In this document: piece by piece, positions 4,771 through 23,787 of the stretch
Numbering within the stretch: position 1 is the stretch's first letter
Layout: every line of letters begins with the position of its first letter
NCBI GenBank assembly: GCA_965644295.1
Contig: CBFFRP010000348.1
Span: 1 to 64,000, forward strand
Origin: Paraphysomonas bandaiensis
Lineage: Eukaryota > Protista > Chrysophyceae
DNA length: 64,000 bases
Direction of reading: 5' to 3'
Translations under genes and position numbers: made by a program
Notes under the pieces: generated by a model
Told to the model about the DNA's origin: nothing
Database searches by the model: none
What the model saw: only the letters and a program-made list of their open reading frames with translations

Positions 4771-7700
4771 CTAGTTGACTGCTTCTCGTCTTACCTTCGC
4801 TGCTGTACGCCTTCGCTTTGACCTGGAGCCATCTTCGTCTCCTGTGGCAGCTACTTCCACCCGTGCAGTCTCCAGGCACTCACCATTGTGCTCTTTTGTC
4901 TCTTTCTCCCCTGCTTCCTCAGCTCTGGCCATCTCTTGCATTTCTGCGACCTTTTTCTGCCACTCTGCGGCTTGCCTATCCGCCTCTGCTTGCTTCTCTT
5001 GACGCTTCCGATGCAGTAGGGCAATGCCCTGCAAAAATGCCTATCATTTTCATCGTAAATATATATAGAGCACTCACCTCTTTTTCGGCGTGCATCTCGA
5101 CTTCTGCATCAGCAGTGCTGTACTTCACCTCATTGGAAGTAGCTACTGAGCCACATAGAGCAGACACATGTGCCTTAACGCTTTTTGCAAAGGACGAGCA
5201 AAACTCGCCTCTAATTTGGTACCCTCCCTCCAGTGCAGACACGACACGACCATTACACGTAGTGTTGGCTATACGGATAAGGTTGGTGGTCACCCATTCG
5301 TAGTCCTCCTCAACCTAGAGCAGGCATTACATATACAAAGTATACCAGTGTATAGGTTATGAAATATGCACAATAAAACGAAGCACGTTCTCTGTATAAA
5401 AAATACGTACCAAAGATATATAGCCACCGTTAATAGTATCTTTTTTGTGCGCATCGAAACCAGCTGATATAAAAATACAATCTGGCTTGAACTCCATTAA
5501 TCGTGGGAATATCACGTTCCTATTATGATTTAGATAAAAACTCTTCAGAAATTATATAGTCACCTGAAGTAGTTGCGCCATTGATGCCTGTACTCCCCCT
5601 GTACGAACTCTCCACTGGGCAATTCCACCCCGACATCTAAAATGAGTGGTGGCATGCTATCTTCTACACCAGAAGGTTTATTGCCATATACCCGAGTCAT
5701 GCGTTCGTATTTGCTCTCAGATGTTGTCGGCAAAGTAGTAGGATAATCCCCACTACCCTCCGATCCACCTCCTCTGTAAGACGAGTCATCTGAGTCACTG
5801 TCATCTCCATCACCACTTCCCCCCACATCCATATCCGCCACTTCCTCGATCTCAGGCGCAGCTTCCGTTCCAGCACTACCGGTGATTCCAGTTCCTTCGA
5901 CAACCAAACTCTCCGCTCCAGCGTCAGGGGTGGTGGACGGAAAAACCGTTCGCCCTGTTCCGGGGTAGAAGGCGGTGGCAGGCATATACTGCTCCAAACC
6001 CCGTTCTCGCGGTCCGTAACCATGAACCGACACAAAAAGAACATTCTTGGCGTCATTTTCGTCAAACCAAGGCTTAAAACGAGGCGTGTGCATTTGCCCA
6101 AACATGGCAGGGGTGATAACCTCGGTAGTGTCCAGGCCTGGCTTTAGCCACCGGATAGTCTCCTCAGTACCATTTCCATGATGTACATCGAAATCTACGA
6201 TTGCAACCCGCTTAACAATGTCCCGATGCACATTCATTGCATACGCGGCCCCAATACTGATGTTGTTCAGGAGACAAAAGCCGTGGCTATCCGGTCCACC
6301 AGCTTCACCTTTCACCAGCCCAGTTGGCCCAGCATGATGTCCGGGCGGCCGCACTGCGCAAAAAGCATTGCGAACTTGTCCAGCAACAACCTGTCCTCAA
6401 AGAATACAATTACCCACAACACAGATTAAAAATATAAAATGATGTAAGAAACATAAGCCGTGCATTCACGTGGCCACCAACCATATCTACAGCCTGGCAT
6501 ACGGAGCCCGCGGCCCGCATGGCTGCATCAAAGCTCCTCTTGCTTACAGCAGTGTCACCATCCAAGTGGGCAAGGCCCCCTTCCATTTCCGCCTCCATAT
6601 CTTCCCCTCCATGAACACTCAGTGGATTCCCGAACCGTTGCGCAAGGTCTGCCAAACAAAAAGTGATTTATTATACGGTACTGTTTATGGGTTAACACCT
6701 TCACATGTTGCCTGCAAGCGACGAACATAGGGCCATTCATGCACCCGAAGCACGTCACTCATTGCTGCGGGTCGACAATCGTCAATAAACACTACGCTAC
6801 TTTCTAAATCGCGTGCCCGTAACACACCATTGGTGTCATCCAGCAACACCGCCAGTCGTTTAATATTCTCAGGAGGAGCAGATTCATCCTCTGTAGAGGA
6901 TGGGGCACATGTGTAATGCATGCGGCAGAAAGGATGAGAGATAATTGCTGTCTGAGCACAGGATGACTGCAGTCGGGGGGCAGGCTGATCAGTTCGACCA
7001 GATCTAAACTCAGCTGGGAGTGCCTGAATCATATCAAAGTGACTGTAGGCAAGCGCTGTGTCCACTGGTGTACGCTGCCATATGTCCCGCGCCTGCATCA
7101 TCGCGCCAAGTCCCTTGCCTGTCTCTAGTGCGGATGATAGTAGGGCACTCCAGACCCGGCGGGATCCAGACGCAGCAGCAACATGCAGAGGGGTGGAACG
7201 TGTTCCATTGACACTCATTAAGGATGCTCCATTTGACAACAACATATGTGCTGAAATAATGTCGGTCAATGCATATAATAAACACGCGACAAGGCGAGAG
7301 CAGTTGACTAGAGACAGACATACCGGTGTTTACAGCGTCTGTCATAGCACAGTGATGCAGCGCTCGGTTTCCTCTCCTGTCTTTGGCATCCAGAGTGTCC
7401 AACAGTTTTGTCCCTTTCTCCCCCTCACTAGAATCGTCCTCGGAGGTTATTGTCCGAATCATATTTTCTACGATTGGTCCTAAATTATATTCACATGCAA
7501 GCTGAAGTGCAGTTATTCCCTGATCATCCTGCAATAAAAGTTATAAACGATCCTAGGACGCAAAGGCCATATTGCCAGTTATTTTTGCTATCACTACCTT
7601 AGCATCGATGTCACATCCCAGTGTTAGCAGCTTCAAAGCACAGCTAATCCCAAAATCGAACCCTCCCGGTAGAATAGCAGTAGATATTGCAAGATGTAGA

Positions 7701-8004
7701 GGAGGAGTTCCATGACATTTCATATTTATATCACCACCCGACTCCACAATAAAAGTAAACGTTTCTAGATTTCTATTTAATCGAACAGTACACATGAGAC
7801 ACACACATGTATTCACATACATATATACCACCTCGCAAATATCGCACAGTGTAAAGCTGAATACTTTAATTCATTTCGTCGATTAATAATACTTGCAATA
7901 GTAGCTAATGGATGACCCTCAGGGAGAGAGCTCTTGATGGACTCTACCGCCTCTTGCATGGCAGCTAGAGACCCTGTCATTGCCACATAATGTAAATCAT
8001 CCAT
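4771..8004 (-). CDS. Ankyrin-repeat histone deacetylase (class II-like), multi-exon
   Basis: N-terminal ankyrin repeats (SALHCA, TPPLHLA, TALQLA, RALHHCA, TPLHVAA). HDAC motifs PPENIKRL, RPPGHHA, GFCLLNN, DFDVHHGNGT, ISAGFDAH and LEGGY. C-terminal charged coiled coil. Exons are separated by short GT-AG introns. Confidence 0.88.
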
Positions 8005-11367: not shown

Positions 11368-12768
11368 ATGGTCCTTTTAGGTGCTGAAGTTGATGAGAAG
11401 AACAAACGCCATTGGTTGCATGCTGTTGTCTTGCAAATAGGCATCCGTATAAGATATCTGTTTGAGAGCTGGTTCGGAATAAAGCCACTCTTTCTGGGTA
11501 TATCCGGATACAAATCCCCCTTCAGACCCAAGAACTGTCCAGAGTAAGTCTCATATGATGTATGATGATGAATATGGTCTGATTTTATTATACAGTTATG
11601 ACATTATTACGCGATTGGGGTTCACGTGGATCTGGTTATTCGCTGCGTTTACTCGTGATGGATTTTCTATTCTATACGTACTGTTCTGTAAAATCGGAGT
11701 TGTATCTTTGATGAATAAGCTCCACTCATGGTTGACAGACAGATTGATAGCTCAGTTCAAAGCAGCTGGATACACTGAGGGTCAAAATGAAGTTCCCATC
11801 CCGGAATACGACTGGCAGAATGGAACTCCAGAGGAATTTTACGACCTCTTTGTTAAGCAACCCCACCCTGTCATTCTTCGTGGGTTCATGAAAAAAACAG
11901 ATCTTCTCAAGGATCTGAACTGGGACACCATTCTCAAGAAGTATGGTGACGAAGAGGTGTATTTGACTAAGAAAGAGCTCGATGGGTACCCCGGCTTGCT
12001 TAAGGAGGTCGAGAACGATAAGATCTACTTGCATAACTCGGAGAAGTTATTCAACAAGTACCCTGAGCTGAGAAATCTATTCCAGTATAAGAGACTTGAG
12101 TCATACTTGAAGATGAAGGTTAGTAAGGTTAAAGTTAATGGAGAACACCAACTCACGAGTTCGTCTTGCAGGTTGGGTACGAGCAACTTTTTGTCGGTCG
12201 CAAGGGCACGGGATCTCCTTTCCATAACGCAGCAGTTTACAATATGTTTTACATGATCGATGGCACTAAAAGGTGGTGGTTTATCGACCCCTACGATACA
12301 TTCCTCGCCTATCCTATTGCTGTGTTGGGCCGCGCGGCTGGTGTTATTGGTTGCCTTTGGCCTATCGATTACAACAAGGAGGCCTTTCCTTTGTTCAAGT
12401 ACTGTCCTGTTTACACTGCTGAGCTTCAGCCAGGTGATGTTTTATTTAATCCCCCATGGTGGTGGCACTCGATCAAGAACACTTCTCCGGTTTCCACGGC
12501 TGTGGCTTCTAGGTGGCACACGGACGGCATTGCCGGACACAACCTGGTGGGTACAGAAGAAGATTATGAAATCTATCGATGGGGATCTTTTGCCTTCCAG
12601 GCAGGGCTTCAGTCTATTCAATTTCTTCACGGGATTCTCCAGGAGCCTTCCCCGAAGTTTGATGAGCACACGTCATTGCGCGAGAAGAACAACCGATATG
12701 TGCACAAACAGATTGCAATCAGTGAACAGGGTGGTCTCGATGTTATGGGAGTTAAGACTCTATACTAA
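11368..12768 (+). CDS. JmjC/cupin-8 Fe(II)/2-oxoglutarate-fold protein with HxA...H metal site, 3 exons
   Basis: PVILRG, LFVGRKGTGSPFHNAAVYNMFYMIDGTKRWWFIDP and LQPGDVLFNPPWWWHSIKN match the JmjC pattern. Introns at about 11544-11595 and 12119-12171. Confidence 0.85.
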
Positions 12769-13526
12769 AGACTGGACGGTAGCTACCACCATGTACTTAC
12801 CCTTGAACAGTATACTATCGAACAAATGACTTGGAAATTTTATGGATTGTATCTGTTCTGTTGAATATATCAGCACGAGTATTGATTAGTTGATGGCACC
12901 GTCGTTTGTTGCCTCACTCGCTGCACATATATGCCATAATAATTACTTTTGCTTTTCTTATATGCGTGCCATATACTGGCTTCCTGTATGATATTTGGAT
13001 TGCACACACCATTAGAGGGACACTTGATATGTAGAAGTGTTATCAGATTATCAGTGGCAGCTGTTCAAATTGAACAGATCATTATTGTCCTTTATGTACA
13101 AAAATACTTGTTTTGTAGCTGAATTTCTTAGTTAAAAGTTAGAGGTACAAGTAAATGAAAACTTGGTTAACTAGGCTAGGTTGTGGTCGCTCCATGCAGC
13201 ATACAGATGTACCCTCTGTAAACAGGGCTCCATAAAAATTATTGTTTTTTCGTTATTTTAGTGTGTGTACGTGTGTTTATGCCAGGTTATGCCCGATTGC
13301 ATTATACTGTGAGCTAGCTTAACACTTACAATATTGATAGAATTTACGCAACAATTTTCAGTCTACTGTTTATGCATATTCTATATGAACATCTAAAATT
13401 ATCCAATTTCATATTTAAATTCAACTTGCATTGCTGTTGCAATATAACGTCATATCAAGGAATCTATCTACTATTTTCATCAGCTGTACAATACATGACA
13501 GTGTTCAATACGACGACTCTATTCTA

Positions 13527-15761: not shown

Positions 15762-17159
15762 ATGAGTCTTCTAGTATCAAAATACATTCATCGTGGAATC
15801 TCTAGTGTACGGAGATATTCCTCAAACATCTTGATTGATTCACTGGGCGCTCATGCCTACACAGACCCCTCTTTATACGAGAAGGAGCGCAGGACTCTTC
15901 TAGGCCCCTCATGGCAACTATTCACCCATGAATCAAGACTCATAGCAGACAGTGATAAGGCACCAGCGACTTATGTAGCTGAAACTTTCTGTGGTTGGCC
16001 AGCTATTGCTGTGAGAAGCAGCAAAACAGGAGAGATCAGAGCGTATCATAACATATGTCGGCATAAGGCTGGTCCTTTAGAATGGGATAATTCAGAGGGA
16101 AAGTGTGCATTGCACGGATTAAAGTGCAAATATCATGGGTGGACTTACTCGGTCGATGGTGAGCTTAGAGGTGTACCAGGATTCGGTGAGGACGGTCGGA
16201 CGCAGCTGAACAAATCTGATTACAACCTGTGGCCCATGCGAGTGGCAGTATGGCGAGGACTAGTTTTCGTGCAAGCCTTACCATCACCAGGGGTTCCAAT
16301 GAGTGGACCAGAGGCTAATGACGCCTTTGTGAGAGAAAATGCGGGCTTTTGCAAGCACTTAGAAGAGGTTCCTCTCGAAGACTTTGAATTTAAAATTGCC
16401 AAGACCCACTCCCTCAAATGCAATTGGAAGGTATGTGTTTAGTTGTTTTTGGTCATGTCGGTAAAATTAAATTTTGCTTCGTGTTTGTAATTGGACAGGT
16501 TTATGTTGAGAACTATTTAGAGGGGTACCACATTCCGACAATCCATCCAGGTCTTAGCAAAGAGGTCGACATGCAAGGCTACCGCGTTAAAGTACACGAT
16601 GGCTTCGTGGAGCACATTGCTCCCACACTTCCTGAAGCTGGAAGCGCGTATAAGGTTGCACTTTGCGTCATATATACATCACCTACCGCTTGTTCTTTAC
16701 ATGTTGCATCGATTGTGCAATAATGGGTAAATGTATGCTGAAGTAATTACGTTAACGTATTTGAGATAGGGACTATGGGTGTGGAACAGCCCCACTCTTG
16801 CTGTGAACTGGTATGGAGCAGGCTTAAGTCTAGAGCGTATTGTTCCAATGGGTGTGGGGTCCACTGAAATACGATATATGTTTCTTTATCACAAAGTATC
16901 TGGTGCGCCGCAGAGCGAGTGGCAGCATGCATTAGACACATCCAAGGAGGTACTGAGATGAAAGTTTGTTGATATATCGTCGCCATTAAATGTACGTATA
17001 TGTATTTCATAGGTGACCGAGGAAGACATCGGTGTGTGTGAGGCGGTACAGAAAGGATTGGACAGTGGTGGATATATCAGTCCAGGAAAGCTCTCCCCAA
17101 GGCATGAGCAAGGAATTGCATATTTCCAACAAATTATTAGAGATACACACGCTAAATAA
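15762..17159 (+). CDS. Rieske non-heme iron oxygenase alpha subunit (choline monooxygenase/CntA-like), 4 exons
   Basis: Rieske ligands NICRHKA and CKYHGWTY; CNWKVYVENYLEGYHIPTIH mononuclear Fe site; EEDIGVCEAVQKGL. The N-terminus is Ser/Arg-rich, like a transit peptide. Confidence 0.88.
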
Positions 17160-19549: not shown

Positions 19550-19699
19550 TAGACGATTGAATCGATGAGACCGAAAGACTGTACGGAGAAGATGAAGAGA
19601 CGGAATTGTGAAGTGAAGTGGAAGATAATGAAAACAAAACCAATGGAAAAGTATGCGAAAAGAAAGATAAACATATGTGACTTCACTACACACGCACTT

Positions 19700-19877
19700 C
19701 ATACATACATACATACATACATACATACATACATACATACATACATACATACATACATACATACATACATACATACATACATACATACATACATACATAC
19801 ATACATACATACATACATACATACATACATACATACATACATACATACATACATACATACATACATACATACATACA

Positions 19878-19908
<31 letters not shown>

Positions 19909-20083
19909 GTACATACCTACCTACCTACCTACCTACCTACCTACCTACCTACATACATACATACATACATACATACATACATACATACATACATACATAC
20001 ATACATACATACATACATACATACATACATACATACATACATACATACATACATACATACATACATACATACATACATACATA
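19700..20083. repeat. (ATAC)n microsatellite with internal (CTAC)n block
   Basis: About 380 bp of tetranucleotide repeat, seen directly. Confidence 0.98.
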
Positions 20084-20238
20084 GCCACAAACTGTATTCT
20101 GCCCCGTATTTTCTGTATTGTGTAACTGATCTCTGTATACCCTCCTGCACATACATGTCTGCATATCTAGATACTCAGTGCACTTAACTGTATCAGTTAT
20201 TATCACTCAAATACTCATTACTCTCTTACATAGCAGTC

Positions 20239-23200
20239 ATGGTCAGTTCCCTCCAAGGTGTGACAATACACAGAGCAAAGGATTTAGCCAATAAAGACGT
20301 ATTCGATAAATCAGATCCTTATTGTGTGGTGAGAATCGGACAGCGCGGAGAGAGTTGGGCCTCTAAGTTCATATCCTCTCAGGGAACACAATGGCGAAGT
20401 TATTCTGTTCAAAATCAGTTAAATCCTGAATGGAATTTATCATTTAGTTGTGATAAGGATGCTGAGTGGCTTCAAGCGGGTCGGTTCATAGGTAGAGAGG
20501 TACATGTCAGGGTATATGATGATGATACACTCGGTGATGATTTTCTGGGTGAGATTATAGTACCTATACCTGATAGTGGAGAGTGTGAGAGAACCTGGGA
20601 GACACTTGCTGGGGCGAAGGATGTTCAAGGTGCTGTTGAGTATAGTTTCTTTACAGATATCACGAGCGTGTTGGGTGAAAAGGGTGACACTGTGTTGAAT
20701 GGCACCGGAACTGCTGATACATCGCCAGTAAGTTATGCCCTAAATATATTTTCTTCGTGGTTGGATGTGTTCTCAGAGGATTCTGAGGAACGCTTTCTAG
20801 ATATCGTTGGGATGGCATTGTCTTGTATGTCCGACAATGAGAAGAGCAAACAAAGCGATGGGCCGTGCATAGAGTACTATCGCTTTCTCTTCATGGAGTA
20901 TCTACAATCTGAGCCGAGCTCTTTATTTTTGCAATATTCAGGAGATGGAGGTAAGACTGCAACAGGGGTTTTTGGTGGTAATTGCACAATGATTTTGGAG
21001 CATGAGGCCGTGAAAACTGAAATGTCATCGTTTTGTCAAAGATGGATTAATGGAGAAATATTTCGAGACAATAATTTCGGTGTGTTTCTTTTTAATCACA
21101 CGGTATTTGGCGACGTTGCTAGTAAAAGCTTGACCTTGAATGTACCTCCTAAGCCACATGAACGTTTAATTAGACCTTTAATATCGTCCCGTGTCGGCAT
21201 CCGTACTCGATGGTCACCGGAGAGAATATATCAGAATGCCTGTTCTTTCTTCGATGATTTAATACAATCTGGCAAACCTTTTTTATCGCAAGCTGATTCT
21301 GCAAGGTGGAGTACTAAGTTTCTTTGGAAGGTTGTTCTCAATCGTGATATCACGGATGGGCAAGCAGTACTTTTTTCTGGGTACATGCGTAAGATCCTAA
21401 GGATATCTATTTTACCCGAGTGGTTAGTTGAACATAATTTTTTTGATAAAGCCTTAGAGGTTGAGGAGACAATTAATTTTCGTCGGGACTTCATTGCTGG
21501 TATCAAGACGGAATTGATCTCAGATCTTCCTGAAGATTTTCCAGCGAGCGACCTGAATCTTCAGGCAGCTGCATTGTTCGACATGCTGTTCTTCGCCGCA
21601 GGTACGGGTGTACCCTCAACCATTACTCGCGTCTTGGCCATGATGGATATGCCGGATTCTCCTGCCAAAGAAGTTGAGCTCAGTGTTGATAACCTATTGG
21701 GGTATATAATGGAAGTGATTCGCCTGCACCCTCTGGTGAATGGTTGCGCATACTACACAGATGAGAGTTGCACTGAAAGAGTAGTGCTGTCAACTGCGTG
21801 TGCTAACCGCGACCACACTGCCTGGGGGGAAGATGCTAACAAGTTCCGCATTCGCAGTATGGAAGACTATAGCAACAAAATGTTTAACTTCATTGAACCC
21901 GTTATTGATCCAAGCAATTCTTCTAACGACCGGAGCTGTCCAGGGAAAGACTTAGCCCTGAATATGGTTCATGGATTTATAAAAGCATTTCTTGAACGAA
22001 GGTCTAAGTTTACTTTATCTGAAGAGGAAGCGGGCAAGATTACACGAAGTAAATTCAACAGGCCGATATTTAATGTTCAATGGAAGTATAAATCGCCCAA
22101 TGTGGAGGAAGCGCCACTTACTCTAGATTCTATTCTTGAGGGTGATGCCAATGGAGCTAAGAGACTCAGTAATATTGCGCCTGCCCAGTTGACGAAATTA
22201 TTTTCTGAACTAAAAAGTGGTACGAAATTGGATCAAGTTGACGACTTCACTAAGTTCTTTTACAAATTTGGATGTAAAAAGAGGGAAATCTTTGAAAAGG
22301 GAAAAGGAGATCAAGGAAAGAAGACGATCGGGCAGATATGTTTACCGAAACCTCCACGCAAATTAGCATATTTTATGCTGCCCGGTGTCGATGGCATTGG
22401 GATCCCAAAAGATGATGAGGATTGGGAAGACAAAACTTTTTTTCAAAAAGTGTATTTGATTAGTAATGCGACCTTAGTTTTGACGTGGATGAAAATATTG
22501 AATAAGAGCGATTCTACTATTTACTTCGACAGTATCGAAGAAGGTCTGTTGATGAAGGAGCTGGTATTTCAAAATGAGGTACCTGAAAGTTACGACTTTA
22601 TTTCCAATTGGGGTACAGATGAAGAGATATCGACACACGCCTTCGCGGGTCTCGGTCAGACATACCTTCGGCGTGTTGAAGGCGCCGAAGATGAGAAGTA
22701 CGAAGTAGATTTGACTCACTTGGCACCTCTAGAAGTTCGTGATGGATTTGAAAGATATGGAGCGCGGGCGGTTTTCAAAAAAGACAGGAGTATTGATTTC
22801 ATTCATGTTTCATCACTGGGAAAGGATGTACACCCGAATGATAACGATTGGGAGTTTGCTAAGTGGACTTGGAAAGTATCTTTGTGTTTTTCTATCACAG
22901 CTGTGAATCACTTGGTTCACACCCACTGGATGATATCAAACTGTGCTCATATTGCATGTCGAACTGAACTTGGTGAAGATCATCCAGTGCGTCGAGTTAT
23001 GAAGGTGTTTTTGTTTAACACTGGTGCTATAAATAGCTCTAGTACCTTGTTGTTATATCCAGAAGATCAGTTGCTGCATCGTATGTCTGGTTTGACGCAT
23101 GCTGGAATGGTGAAAGGGTTTGATAGCGCCGTTGCGTGTTTTAAGTATGAGACTTTTCCTGATTATCTCAACTCTAAGCAGCTGGGTGAAGATCTACAGA

Positions 23201-23787
23201 CCTCTCTGCCTATATACACAGATGCATTGCCTGTGTGGGACACATTGCTAAAGTTCTTTACAAATTATGTTGCACTTTTTTATACTGATGATGCTGCTGT
23301 TCAATCCGACCTTCAGTTAGTTCAGTTCTGGGACTGTGTCGAGAACCGAGGGCGTTTCGGGTGCACACATACGTACGGGTTACCTGCTCTCACTCGCAAT
23401 AACCTCGTAAATTATCTAACTCACGTTGCTTTCACTGTGTCATGCTGGCACGAATTTGTTGGTGGAATGATTCAGTATTGTGATTCCCCTAACGCATTGG
23501 GATTTAGCATTCGTTCAGATAAGACACAAATGGATGTTCAACAATTCGTCAATGTTTTGGTTTTGATTGGGCTAACCGGGCGCGCTAACCCTCGCCTAAT
23601 GGAAAATTGGAAGCATCTGTTACCATCCCATCCTGAAGCAGCTAAGCTGCACCAGACATTAATAGAAGATCTGGAAAAGCTATCAGCTGCCGTGGACAAG
23701 CGTAACGAAGGTGCAGAAGCAACACCCCGTATGCGAGCATTCAATGCGTTCAATCCTAAGTATTTTGAAACGTCGGTTTCCATATAA
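20239..23787 (+). CDS. C2 domain + CYP74-clan-like cytochrome P450 + lipoxygenase fusion protein (1182 aa, intronless)
   Basis: C2: AKDLANKDVFDKSDPY...LNPEWN...VYDDDTLGDDFLGE. P450: I-helix FFAAGTG, E492-x-x-R (MEVIRLHP), ANRD..WG..ANKFR and heme Cys567 (DRSCPGKDLA). LOX: WEFAK, H891/H896 (HLVHTHW), HPV, H1071 and C-terminal SVSI. Confidence 0.9.
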   Translation: MVSSLQGVTIHRAKDLANKDVFDKSDPYCVVRIGQRGESWASKFISSQGTQWRSYSVQNQLNPEWNLSFSCDKDAEWLQAGRFIGREVHVRVYDDDTLGDDFLGEIIVPIPDSGECERTWETLAGAKDVQGAVEYSFFTDITSVLGEKGDTVLNGTGTADTSPVSYALNIFSSWLDVFSEDSEERFLDIVGMALSCMSDNEKSKQSDGPCIEYYRFLFMEYLQSEPSSLFLQYSGDGGKTATGVFGGNCTMILEHEAVKTEMSSFCQRWINGEIFRDNNFGVFLFNHTVFGDVASKSLTLNVPPKPHERLIRPLISSRVGIRTRWSPERIYQNACSFFDDLIQSGKPFLSQADSARWSTKFLWKVVLNRDITDGQAVLFSGYMRKILRISILPEWLVEHNFFDKALEVEETINFRRDFIAGIKTELISDLPEDFPASDLNLQAAALFDMLFFAAGTGVPSTITRVLAMMDMPDSPAKEVELSVDNLLGYIMEVIRLHPLVNGCAYYTDESCTERVVLSTACANRDHTAWGEDANKFRIRSMEDYSNKMFNFIEPVIDPSNSSNDRSCPGKDLALNMVHGFIKAFLERRSKFTLSEEEAGKITRSKFNRPIFNVQWKYKSPNVEEAPLTLDSILEGDANGAKRLSNIAPAQLTKLFSELKSGTKLDQVDDFTKFFYKFGCKKREIFEKGKGDQGKKTIGQICLPKPPRKLAYFMLPGVDGIGIPKDDEDWEDKTFFQKVYLISNATLVLTWMKILNKSDSTIYFDSIEEGLLMKELVFQNEVPESYDFISNWGTDEEISTHAFAGLGQTYLRRVEGAEDEKYEVDLTHLAPLEVRDGFERYGARAVFKKDRSIDFIHVSSLGKDVHPNDNDWEFAKWTWKVSLCFSITAVNHLVHTHWMISNCAHIACRTELGEDHPVRRVMKVFLFNTGAINSSSTLLLYPEDQLLHRMSGLTHAGMVKGFDSAVACFKYETFPDYLNSKQLGEDLQTSLPIYTDALPVWDTLLKFFTNYVALFYTDDAAVQSDLQLVQFWDCVENRGRFGCTHTYGLPALTRNNLVNYLTHVAFTVSCWHEFVGGMIQYCDSPNALGFSIRSDKTQMDVQQFVNVLVLIGLTGRANPRLMENWKHLLPSHPEAAKLHQTLIEDLEKLSAAVDKRNEGAEATPRMRAFNAFNPKYFETSVSI

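What the first reader, a model, noticed from the sequence alone, without database searches (positions are those of the whole stretch)
11368..12768. JmjC-fold protein with the His-x-Ala halogenase signature
Seen: at the position of the JmjC H-x-D/E motif the sequence is H-N-A (cat aac gca, 12223-12231). The downstream Asn, the 2OG-binding Lys (DGTKRW) and the distal His (WWWHSIKN) are retained. Established: in Fe(II)/2OG enzymes, replacing the carboxylate with Ala or Gly opens a halide site (SyrB2 HxA; WelO5 and BesD HxG). Inference: a candidate eukaryotic radical halogenase. It also has an N-terminal hydrophobic segment, suggesting a membrane or lipid substrate. Chrysophytes such as Ochromonas make chlorosulfolipids, and to my knowledge the chlorinating enzymes are unidentified. 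That link is speculative because the host is not identified.
Basis: partly seen in the sequence, partly recalled or inferred. Interest (0 to 1): 0.8.

Follow-up and report, generated by a model that had tools for sequence, protein, structure and literature searches.

The report
Chrysophyte candidate lipid-chlorinating JmjC enzyme
An expressed gene of the colourless golden alga Paraphysomonas encodes an iron enzyme with the open metal site typical of chlorinating enzymes, and its bacterial relatives often sit in gene clusters that look built to make sulfated, chlorinated fatty alcohols, so it is a strong but untested candidate for a chlorinating enzyme of chlorosulfolipids, for which I found no gene reported.

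Summary
Observation confirmed. A three-exon gene (both introns seen spliced in four RNA assemblies) encodes a 431-aa Cupin_8/JmjC protein with H251-N-A253, N257, K266 and H332. The identical transcript protein is from Paraphysomonas (MMETSP1103). HxA is near-invariant in the family (129/131), so this is not decay. The closest solved structure, by sequence and by fold, is the bacterial Fe/2OG halogenase OocP (8A82).

Full-length bacterial homologues (40-47% identity) lie beside a sulfotransferase in 8 of 15 loci. Often the cluster also holds a fatty-acyl ligase or PKS with a terminal reductase, extra HxA cupins, and a SyrB2-type chlorinating-enzyme gene. That inventory fits a chlorosulfolipid-like pathway. 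Paraphysomonas has at least 10 HxA cupin loci, including relatives of both subfamilies that sit side by side in those clusters.

No activity is shown. Two-His hydroxylases exist. No known chlorosulfolipid producer was among the named hits. The 'membrane anchor' is weak. Halogenase about 0.7; chlorosulfolipid-type substrate about 0.45. The scan earlier flagged paralogues in this genome as OocP-like; their snippets do not mention the cluster link.

The parts
11368..11543 (+). exon 1 (codons 1-59; ATG at 11368; transcripts reach upstream to about 11295)
11544..11595 (+). intron 1, 52 nt, GT..AG
   Evidence: skipped in 4/4 RNA assemblies
11596..12118 (+). exon 2: N-terminal helices and JmjC-associated region
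11603..11764 (+). helices at residues 62-115; moderately hydrophobic and amphipathic; conserved W72, R79, G93, H102, R108; not a clear transmembrane anchor
12026..12043 (+). Y203-L-H-N206-S-E208 motif. Y203 is a probable 2OG contact (inferred by analogy to FIH). Y and N-S are shared with OocP; E208 aligns to Ala in OocP
12119..12171 (+). intron 2, 53 nt, GT..AG
   Evidence: (cut +2), P0001 and P0058 junction
12172..12768 (+). exon 3: double-stranded beta-helix core and C-terminal helices; stop TAA at 12766-12768
   Evidence: Pfam Cupin_8 E 1.6e-19
12223..12231 (+). H251-N252-A253: proximal iron His, with Ala in place of the Asp/Glu ligand
12241..12270 (+). N257 ... K266: 2OG-binding residues by alignment to FIH, JMJD5 and OocP
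12466..12468 (+). H332, distal iron His
12769..12960 (+). 3' UTR; poly(A) tail attached at 12960 in one run

Best explanation
It is an Fe(II)/2-oxoglutarate radical chlorinase of the JmjC fold (OocP-like) acting on a long alkyl chain, most likely a fatty-alcohol sulfate of chlorosulfolipid type. Proposed mechanism, inferred from established SyrB2/OocP-type chemistry: Fe is held by H251 and H332. 2OG is held through K266, N257 and Y203. Ala253 leaves room for chloride on the iron. O2 and 2OG give a chloro-ferryl species that abstracts H from one unactivated carbon, and Cl rebounds. The amphipathic N-terminal helices would cap the core and take up the lipid at a membrane surface (inferred). The other HxA paralogues would each chlorinate other positions (inferred). 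Shown here: gene, expression, fold, motif, conservation, bacterial neighbourhoods. Not shown: halide binding, chlorination, substrate.
For: HxA 129/131 in the full-length family. Among the best representative hits, 111 are HxA and 5 HxG against 4 HxD/E. Top PDB hit is halogenase OocP: profile E 2.5e-32 vs 1.4e-14 for FIH; Foldseek rank 1; Z 25.6 vs 21.5 for JMJD5, 316 residues aligned. OocP is a trans-acting Fe/aKG halogenase (PMC11260071). Bacterial clusters: PKS-sulfotransferase-P450-cupin; FAAL-ACP-reductase ... AurF-like, sulfotransferase, two HxA cupins; PKS ending in reductase-sulfotransferase, then WHQA PhyH, then cupin; FAAL-ACP-reductase-AurF fusion, sulfotransferase and three HxA cupins in L060 and L061; L106 and L107. 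The WHQA neighbours score best on TIGR01762 chlorinating enzyme, below cut-off. Sulfotransferase present in 8/15 full-length-family loci against 0/12 more distant HxA loci. The host genome holds relatives of both clustered cupin subfamilies, two FAAL-like genes and related sulfotransferases. Chrysophytes are the known producers (PMC13413282, PMC5632803).
Against: No assay. FIH D201G is a viable hydroxylase, and AspH is a natural two-His hydroxylase without halogenase activity (PMC6817910). A hydroxylase is also a natural partner of a sulfotransferase (PMC2938197). None of these bacterial clusters has a product known to me. The loci are related, so 8/15 is not 8 independent events. Named eukaryotic carriers (Paraphysomonas, Dinobryon, Chromulina, Epipyxis, Pedospumella, CCMP2298) do not include O. 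danica or P. malhamensis; most hits are unnamed. In the host the genes are not clustered. Identity to OocP is only about 20%. Distant HxA relatives sit in terpenoid and NRPS/PKS clusters.
Confidence: 0.47

Rival explanations
1. It is a true Fe/2OG halogenase, but the substrate is not a chlorosulfolipid: for example an ACP- or CoA-bound acyl chain as for OocP, a sterol or triterpenoid, or another small metabolite.
For: OocP acts on PKS intermediates with partner OocQ. Distant HxA relatives lie in a cyanobacterial terpene-cyclase/P450/Rieske cluster (motif HCA) and beside PKS genes. L063 lies near a squalene-hopene-cyclase-like gene. 7 of 15 family loci show no sulfotransferase.
Against: For this subfamily the sulfotransferase is the recurrent neighbour on several branches of the tree. 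The clusters contain reductase domains that would release a free alcohol or aldehyde.
Confidence: 0.23
2. It is a two-His 2OG oxygenase that hydroxylates or desaturates an alkyl chain, supplying the mid-chain OH that the sulfotransferase sulfates. Water, chloride or a substrate oxygen fills the open site, but no C-Cl bond forms.
For: FIH D201G is active, and AspH is a natural two-His hydroxylase. Dioxygenase-sulfotransferase pairs are commonly hydroxylate-then-sulfate systems. A few wider-family members have HxE or HxD (own-genome L003, L011).
Against: The nearest characterised relative is a halogenase. Ala is held across bacteria and chrysophytes at 35-100% identity. The clusters already carry P450, AurF-like or Rieske oxygenases that could supply OH groups, and some carry a SyrB2-type gene, so halogenation is part of at least some pathways.
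Confidence: 0.22
3. A third protein ligand replaces the carboxylate (H205, E208, or residue 252), giving a three-ligand oxygenase or a non-catalytic lipid-binding protein.
For: E208 is invariant and H205 90% conserved in the close family.
Against: E208 is Ala in OocP and varies in the wider family (54 E, 18 A, 18 S); H205 and position 252 vary freely. All 2OG and iron residues are kept.
Confidence: 0.07
4. It is a decayed JmjC copy that lost its Asp.
For: None found.
Against: Intact, spliced, polyadenylated transcript; Ala near-invariant across the family.
Confidence: 0.01

Closest known systems
OocP (PDB 8A82), Fe(II)/aKG halogenase of the oocydin trans-AT PKS
   Same: Cupin_8/JmjC fold; no acidic iron ligand; same Lys, distal His and Y-x-x-N-S motif; best sequence and fold match, with the alignment extending into the N-terminal helices.
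   Different: About 20% identity; HxA rather than HxG; Asn257 where OocP has Ser; eukaryotic, intron-containing, not beside a PKS; no OocQ-like partner tested; probably a free lipid rather than a PKS-bound substrate.
FIH / JMJD5 / JMJD7 / TYW5 JmjC hydroxylases
   Same: Double-stranded beta-helix core with H..H and the 2OG Lys (Z 18-21).
   Different: They have HxD; this has HxA, plus extra N- and C-terminal helical regions.
SyrB2 / WelO5 / BesD / plant DAH 2OG halogenases
   Same: HxA/G...H site logic (PMC12346261, PMC6817910).
   Different: Different 2OG-oxygenase subfamilies; this protein does not hit TIGR01762. DAH is the one plant case (PMC12346261).
Aranazole (arz) cluster halogenases, Fischerella
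   Same: Six Fe/2OG halogenases proposed for six chlorinated positions on a fatty-acyl chain (PMC10088813): the same one-enzyme-per-position logic proposed here.
   Different: NRPS-PKS lipopeptide, not a sulfolipid. Sequence relation to this family was not tested (no sequences by reference).
Stramenopile/choanoflagellate FIH-family expansion, some fused to sulfotransferase (Iyer et al. 2010, PMC2938197)
   Same: JmjC expansion in stramenopiles with a sulfotransferase link.
   Different: Described there as extracellular FIH1-family versions; the passages read make no HxA or halogenase claim for them, and I did not test whether it is the same family.

Membership tests
Fe(II)/2OG-dependent halogenases (OocP type) | Double-stranded beta-helix fold | tested here: met
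   Pfam Cupin_8; AF2 pLDDT 95; OocP Z 25.6
Fe(II)/2OG-dependent halogenases (OocP type) | Two His ligands with Ala/Gly at the carboxylate position, conserved in the family | tested here: met
Fe(II)/2OG-dependent halogenases (OocP type) | 2OG-binding residues retained | tested here: met
   K266 98%, N257 100%, Y203 100%; aligned to FIH and OocP
Fe(II)/2OG-dependent halogenases (OocP type) | No substitute protein ligand fills the open site in 3D | tested here: inconclusive
   Model coordinates not returned. By alignment the candidates E208, H205 and 252 are not conserved in OocP or the wider family
Fe(II)/2OG-dependent halogenases (OocP type) | Halide binding and C-Cl bond formation | not testable with these tools
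   needs an assay
Fe(II)/2OG-dependent halogenases (OocP type) | OocQ-like partner and PKS-bound substrate | not tested
   no OocQ sequence available by reference; no PKS next to the gene
FIH/JMJD5-type JmjC hydroxylases | HxD/E...H facial triad | tested here: not met
   H-N-A
SyrB2/BarB/CmaB chlorinating enzymes (TIGR01762) | Match to the family profile | tested here: not met
   no NCBIfam hit for P0058
Chlorosulfolipid biosynthetic enzyme | Present and expressed in a proven producer (O. danica, P. malhamensis) | tested here: inconclusive
   six named chrysophytes carry it, neither producer among the few named hits
Chlorosulfolipid biosynthetic enzyme | Genetic link to fatty-alcohol formation and sulfation | tested here: inconclusive
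   met in bacterial homologues; the host has the parts but unlinked

The most novel reading that the evidence does not exclude
This gene and its HxA paralogues are the chrysophyte chlorosulfolipid chlorinases, one per position. The family is shared with undescribed myxobacterial and other bacterial clusters (acyl ligase or PKS, terminal reductase, sulfotransferase, two to three halogenases, acyltransferase) that make chlorosulfolipid-type compounds. That would supply the missing genes for danicalipin/mytilipin-type lipids and name heterotrophic marine chrysophytes and bacteria as candidate producers.
Probability: 0.4. Interest if true: 0.9.

Novelty: new variant of a known kind. Interest (0 to 1): 0.74.

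Why it matters
Chlorosulfolipids have been known since the 1960s as the main polar lipid of the Ochromonas danica flagellar membrane (PMC5632803) and as suspected shellfish toxins. A 2026 survey found marine congeners with up to 11 Cl whose producers are unknown, and chrysophytes were not assessed (PMC13413282). I found no paper in the held library assigning chlorinating genes to them; the library lacks most subscription journals. Eukaryotic Fe/2OG halogenases are very rare (DAH is the single plant case, PMC12346261). This finding gives named genes, a heterologously testable bacterial cluster and a marker gene for producers. It would also add site-selective C-H chlorinases for free alkyl chains to biocatalysis.

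Tried and rejected
1. Decayed copy: rejected.
2. Transmembrane anchor: not supported; hydropathy is borderline and the helices align with OocP.
3. Local gene cluster in the window: none. Neighbours are a zinc-ADH-like gene, an MFS transporter, a Rieske oxygenase, an HDAC-ankyrin gene and a C2-lipoxygenase.
4. Gymnodinium catenatum hit P0006: it nests in the chrysophyte clade, so it is probably a contaminant and was not counted. The same holds for the Sphagnum hit P0129.
5. NCBIfam: no family for the protein. The Atlas gave only generic Cupin_8 clusters.
6. The OocP structure paper, a halogenase review and the FIH D201 paper were not held. Paper searches for a chlorosulfolipid halogenase found nothing.
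7. The Kentron homologue context was not on record.
9. The script machine was lost, so no formal test of the 8/15 vs 0/12 contrast was run; the loci are not independent anyway.
10. The tree was a quick SH-aLRT tree whose outgroup was not one clade; I draw no conclusion on the direction of gene transfer.

Full report
OBSERVATION. The span is a three-exon gene: 11368-11543, 11596-12118 and 12172-12768. Contigs from four RNA or probable-RNA runs of four studies skip exactly these 52- and 53-nt GT-AG introns, and one ends in poly(A) at 12960. The product is 431 aa. A public transcript contig differs from the genome at one base, S228P, and its ORF is identical to database protein P0058 from MMETSP1103, taxid 36769, Paraphysomonas. 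The host is therefore a colourless chrysophyte; the sequence also occurs in marine metatranscriptomes. Exon 3 hits Pfam Cupin_8 at E 1.6e-19.

METHOD NOTE. I handed no self-joined model to any search tool. A joined translation was built only inside scripts for local alignment and hydropathy. Full-length searches and the fold used database records by id (P0001, P0058 and their homologues). The big protein search was used once, because Pfam left the family open and the claim depends on the motif holding beyond the word search.

CONSERVATION. Ala253 is present in 49/49 close homologues with a residue there, while position 252 varies among H, N, D, S and C. In 133 longer homologues down to 35% identity, 129 read HxA, one HxT, one PxA and two are gapped. 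Among the best hits of the exhaustive profile search, 111 are HxA, 5 HxG, 3 HxS and 4 HxD/E. The loss of the carboxylate is an old, selected family trait. Named eukaryotic carriers are chrysophytes: Paraphysomonas, Dinobryon, Chromulina, Epipyxis, Pedospumella and Ochromonadaceae CCMP2298. They fall in one well-supported 16-row clade. Further unnamed eukaryote-like branches exist.

STRUCTURE. The AF2 model of P0058 has mean pLDDT 95. The best solved relative is 8A82, 'Fe(II)/aKG-dependent halogenase OocPQ', by phmmer, by profile (E 2.5e-32 vs 1.4e-14 for FIH), by Foldseek and by VIA-align (Z 25.6, 316 residues, rmsd 3.4, vs Z 21.5 for JMJD5). OocP has H-Q-G at the same place and is the trans-acting halogenase of the oocydin PKS (PMC11260071). 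Its hydropathy is borderline (1.68; family median 1.49) and it is interrupted by conserved R79. I read it as amphipathic helices. Coordinates were not returned, so I could not measure the metal site. By alignment, E208 is Ala in OocP and variable in the wider family, and H205 is variable.

BACTERIAL NEIGHBOURHOODS. This is the strongest new evidence on substrate. Full-length bacterial homologues at about 40-47% identity lie in these arrangements. PKS, sulfotransferase, P450, cupin. Fatty acyl-AMP ligase-ACP-reductase, then AurF-like, sulfotransferase, cupin A and cupin B fused to a WS/DGAT-like domain, in a Myxococcales genome. A PKS ending in ACP-reductase-sulfotransferase, then a PhyH protein with WHQA, cupin A and a WS/DGAT-like gene. 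A FAAL-ACP-reductase-AurF fusion with a sulfotransferase and three HxA cupins in L060 and L061. Acyltransferase, two HxA cupins, WHQA PhyH, sulfotransferase and reductase in L106. Two HxA cupins and a sulfotransferase in L107. A sulfatase-sulfotransferase fusion beside the cupin in L065. The two WHQA proteins scanned (L054, L066) score best on TIGR01762 'chlorinating enzyme', below its cut-off. A sulfotransferase is present in 8 of 15 loci of the full-length family and in 0 of 12 more distant HxA loci. These loci are related, so this is not a count of independent events, but the architectures differ and the link appears on three branches of the tree. Established chemistry reads this inventory as: acyl chain loaded or built, reductively released, sulfated, and oxidised or chlorinated at several carbons. 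That is the skeleton of a chlorosulfolipid; an acyltransferase also fits, since mytilipin B carries a C16 ester (PMC13413282). No product of these clusters is known to me.

HOST GENOME. At least 10 loci carry HxA cupins; the two closest pairs are 80-83% identical in DNA, so they are paralogues. This gene is the cupin-A relative, and four others best match cupin B, the neighbour of cupin A in the bacterial clusters. The genome also has two intron-containing FAAL-like genes (best exon segments 48-59% identical to the cluster ligase), related sulfotransferases and NAD_binding_4 reductases. None is adjacent to this gene. Sulfotransferases and reductases of these families are widespread, so they are permissive evidence only.

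MECHANISM. Most likely a two-His Fe(II)/2OG radical chlorinase on a long alkyl chain, probably an alkyl sulfate, with paralogues covering other positions. A precedent for that logic is the aranazole cluster, with six Fe/2OG halogenases for six positions (PMC10088813). Replacing the acidic ligand by Gly/Ala is the recognised halogenase switch (PMC12346261). From my own knowledge, not checked here: old feeding work in O. danica placed chlorination after sulfation, on unactivated carbons, and non-haem iron halogenases have been proposed for it. I put halogenase activity of any kind at about 0.7 and the chlorosulfolipid-type substrate at about 0.45.

RIVALS. A two-His site is not proof. FIH D201G hydroxylates, and AspH does not halogenate (PMC6817910). 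A hydroxylase feeding a sulfotransferase is a known pairing (PMC2938197). Distant HxA relatives serve terpenoid and NRPS/PKS clusters, so another substrate is possible. The proven producers O. danica and P. malhamensis were not among the few named hits, and I found no report of chlorosulfolipids in Paraphysomonas.

NOVELTY. The chemistry, if real, is of a known kind (OocP). A free-standing, expanded, chrysophyte-wide JmjC halogenase family tied through bacterial clusters to sulfolipid synthesis is not described in the papers I could search. Earlier notes of this scan reached the OocP-like reading for other loci in the same genome; I had that reading before looking, and they are not independent support. 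Verdict: real, expressed and conserved; a new variant of a known kind; interest 0.74, because it makes a long-standing biosynthetic question directly testable.

Noticed in passing
window 20239-23787 (+): 1182-aa intronless ORF with an N-terminal C2 domain and a C-terminal lipoxygenase domain; a lipid-oxidising enzyme 7.5 kb from the cupin.
   Followed up: no
window 15762-16723 (+): Rieske oxygenase resembling choline monooxygenase (Pfam Rieske).
   Followed up: no
window 5560-7831 (-): Ankyrin-like exons followed by a histone-deacetylase domain, probably one gene.
   Followed up: no
G000:C410:150366-153010 (-) and G000:C352:303972-305879 (-): Two intron-containing genes similar to bacterial fatty acyl-AMP ligases of the clusters; downstream domains could not be fetched.
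   Followed up: partly
L060, L061 (bacterial MAGs): FAAL-ACP-reductase-AurF-like fusion with a sulfotransferase and three HxA cupins: a compact cluster, not described to my knowledge, predicted to make polychlorinated alkyl sulfates.
   Followed up: partly
L112:6325-24380 (Planktothrix agardhii plasmid NZ_LR882940.1): HCA cupin inside a terpene-cyclase cluster with several P450s, three Rieske proteins and a carbamoyltransferase; possible chlorinated triterpenoid pathway.
   Followed up: no
L110, L111 (IMG/VR contigs): Two viral contigs of 90-100 kb carry an HxA cupin relative at 32% identity.
   Followed up: no
L066:247-6964: Two B12-dependent radical SAM genes, a WHQA SyrB2-type gene and an HCA cupin in one acidobacterial operon.
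   Followed up: no
G000:C450:24062 (L003) and G000:C357:111710 (L011): Relatives of the HxA family in the host with HSE and HCE motifs: possible natural hydroxylase counterparts, useful as controls.
   Followed up: no
G000:C271:6920-7672 (+): Weak match to TIGR01762 chlorinating enzyme (E 7e-5); motif not examined.
   Followed up: no
window about 19600-20200: Long ATAC/TATG tetranucleotide microsatellite producing spurious ORFs.
   Followed up: no
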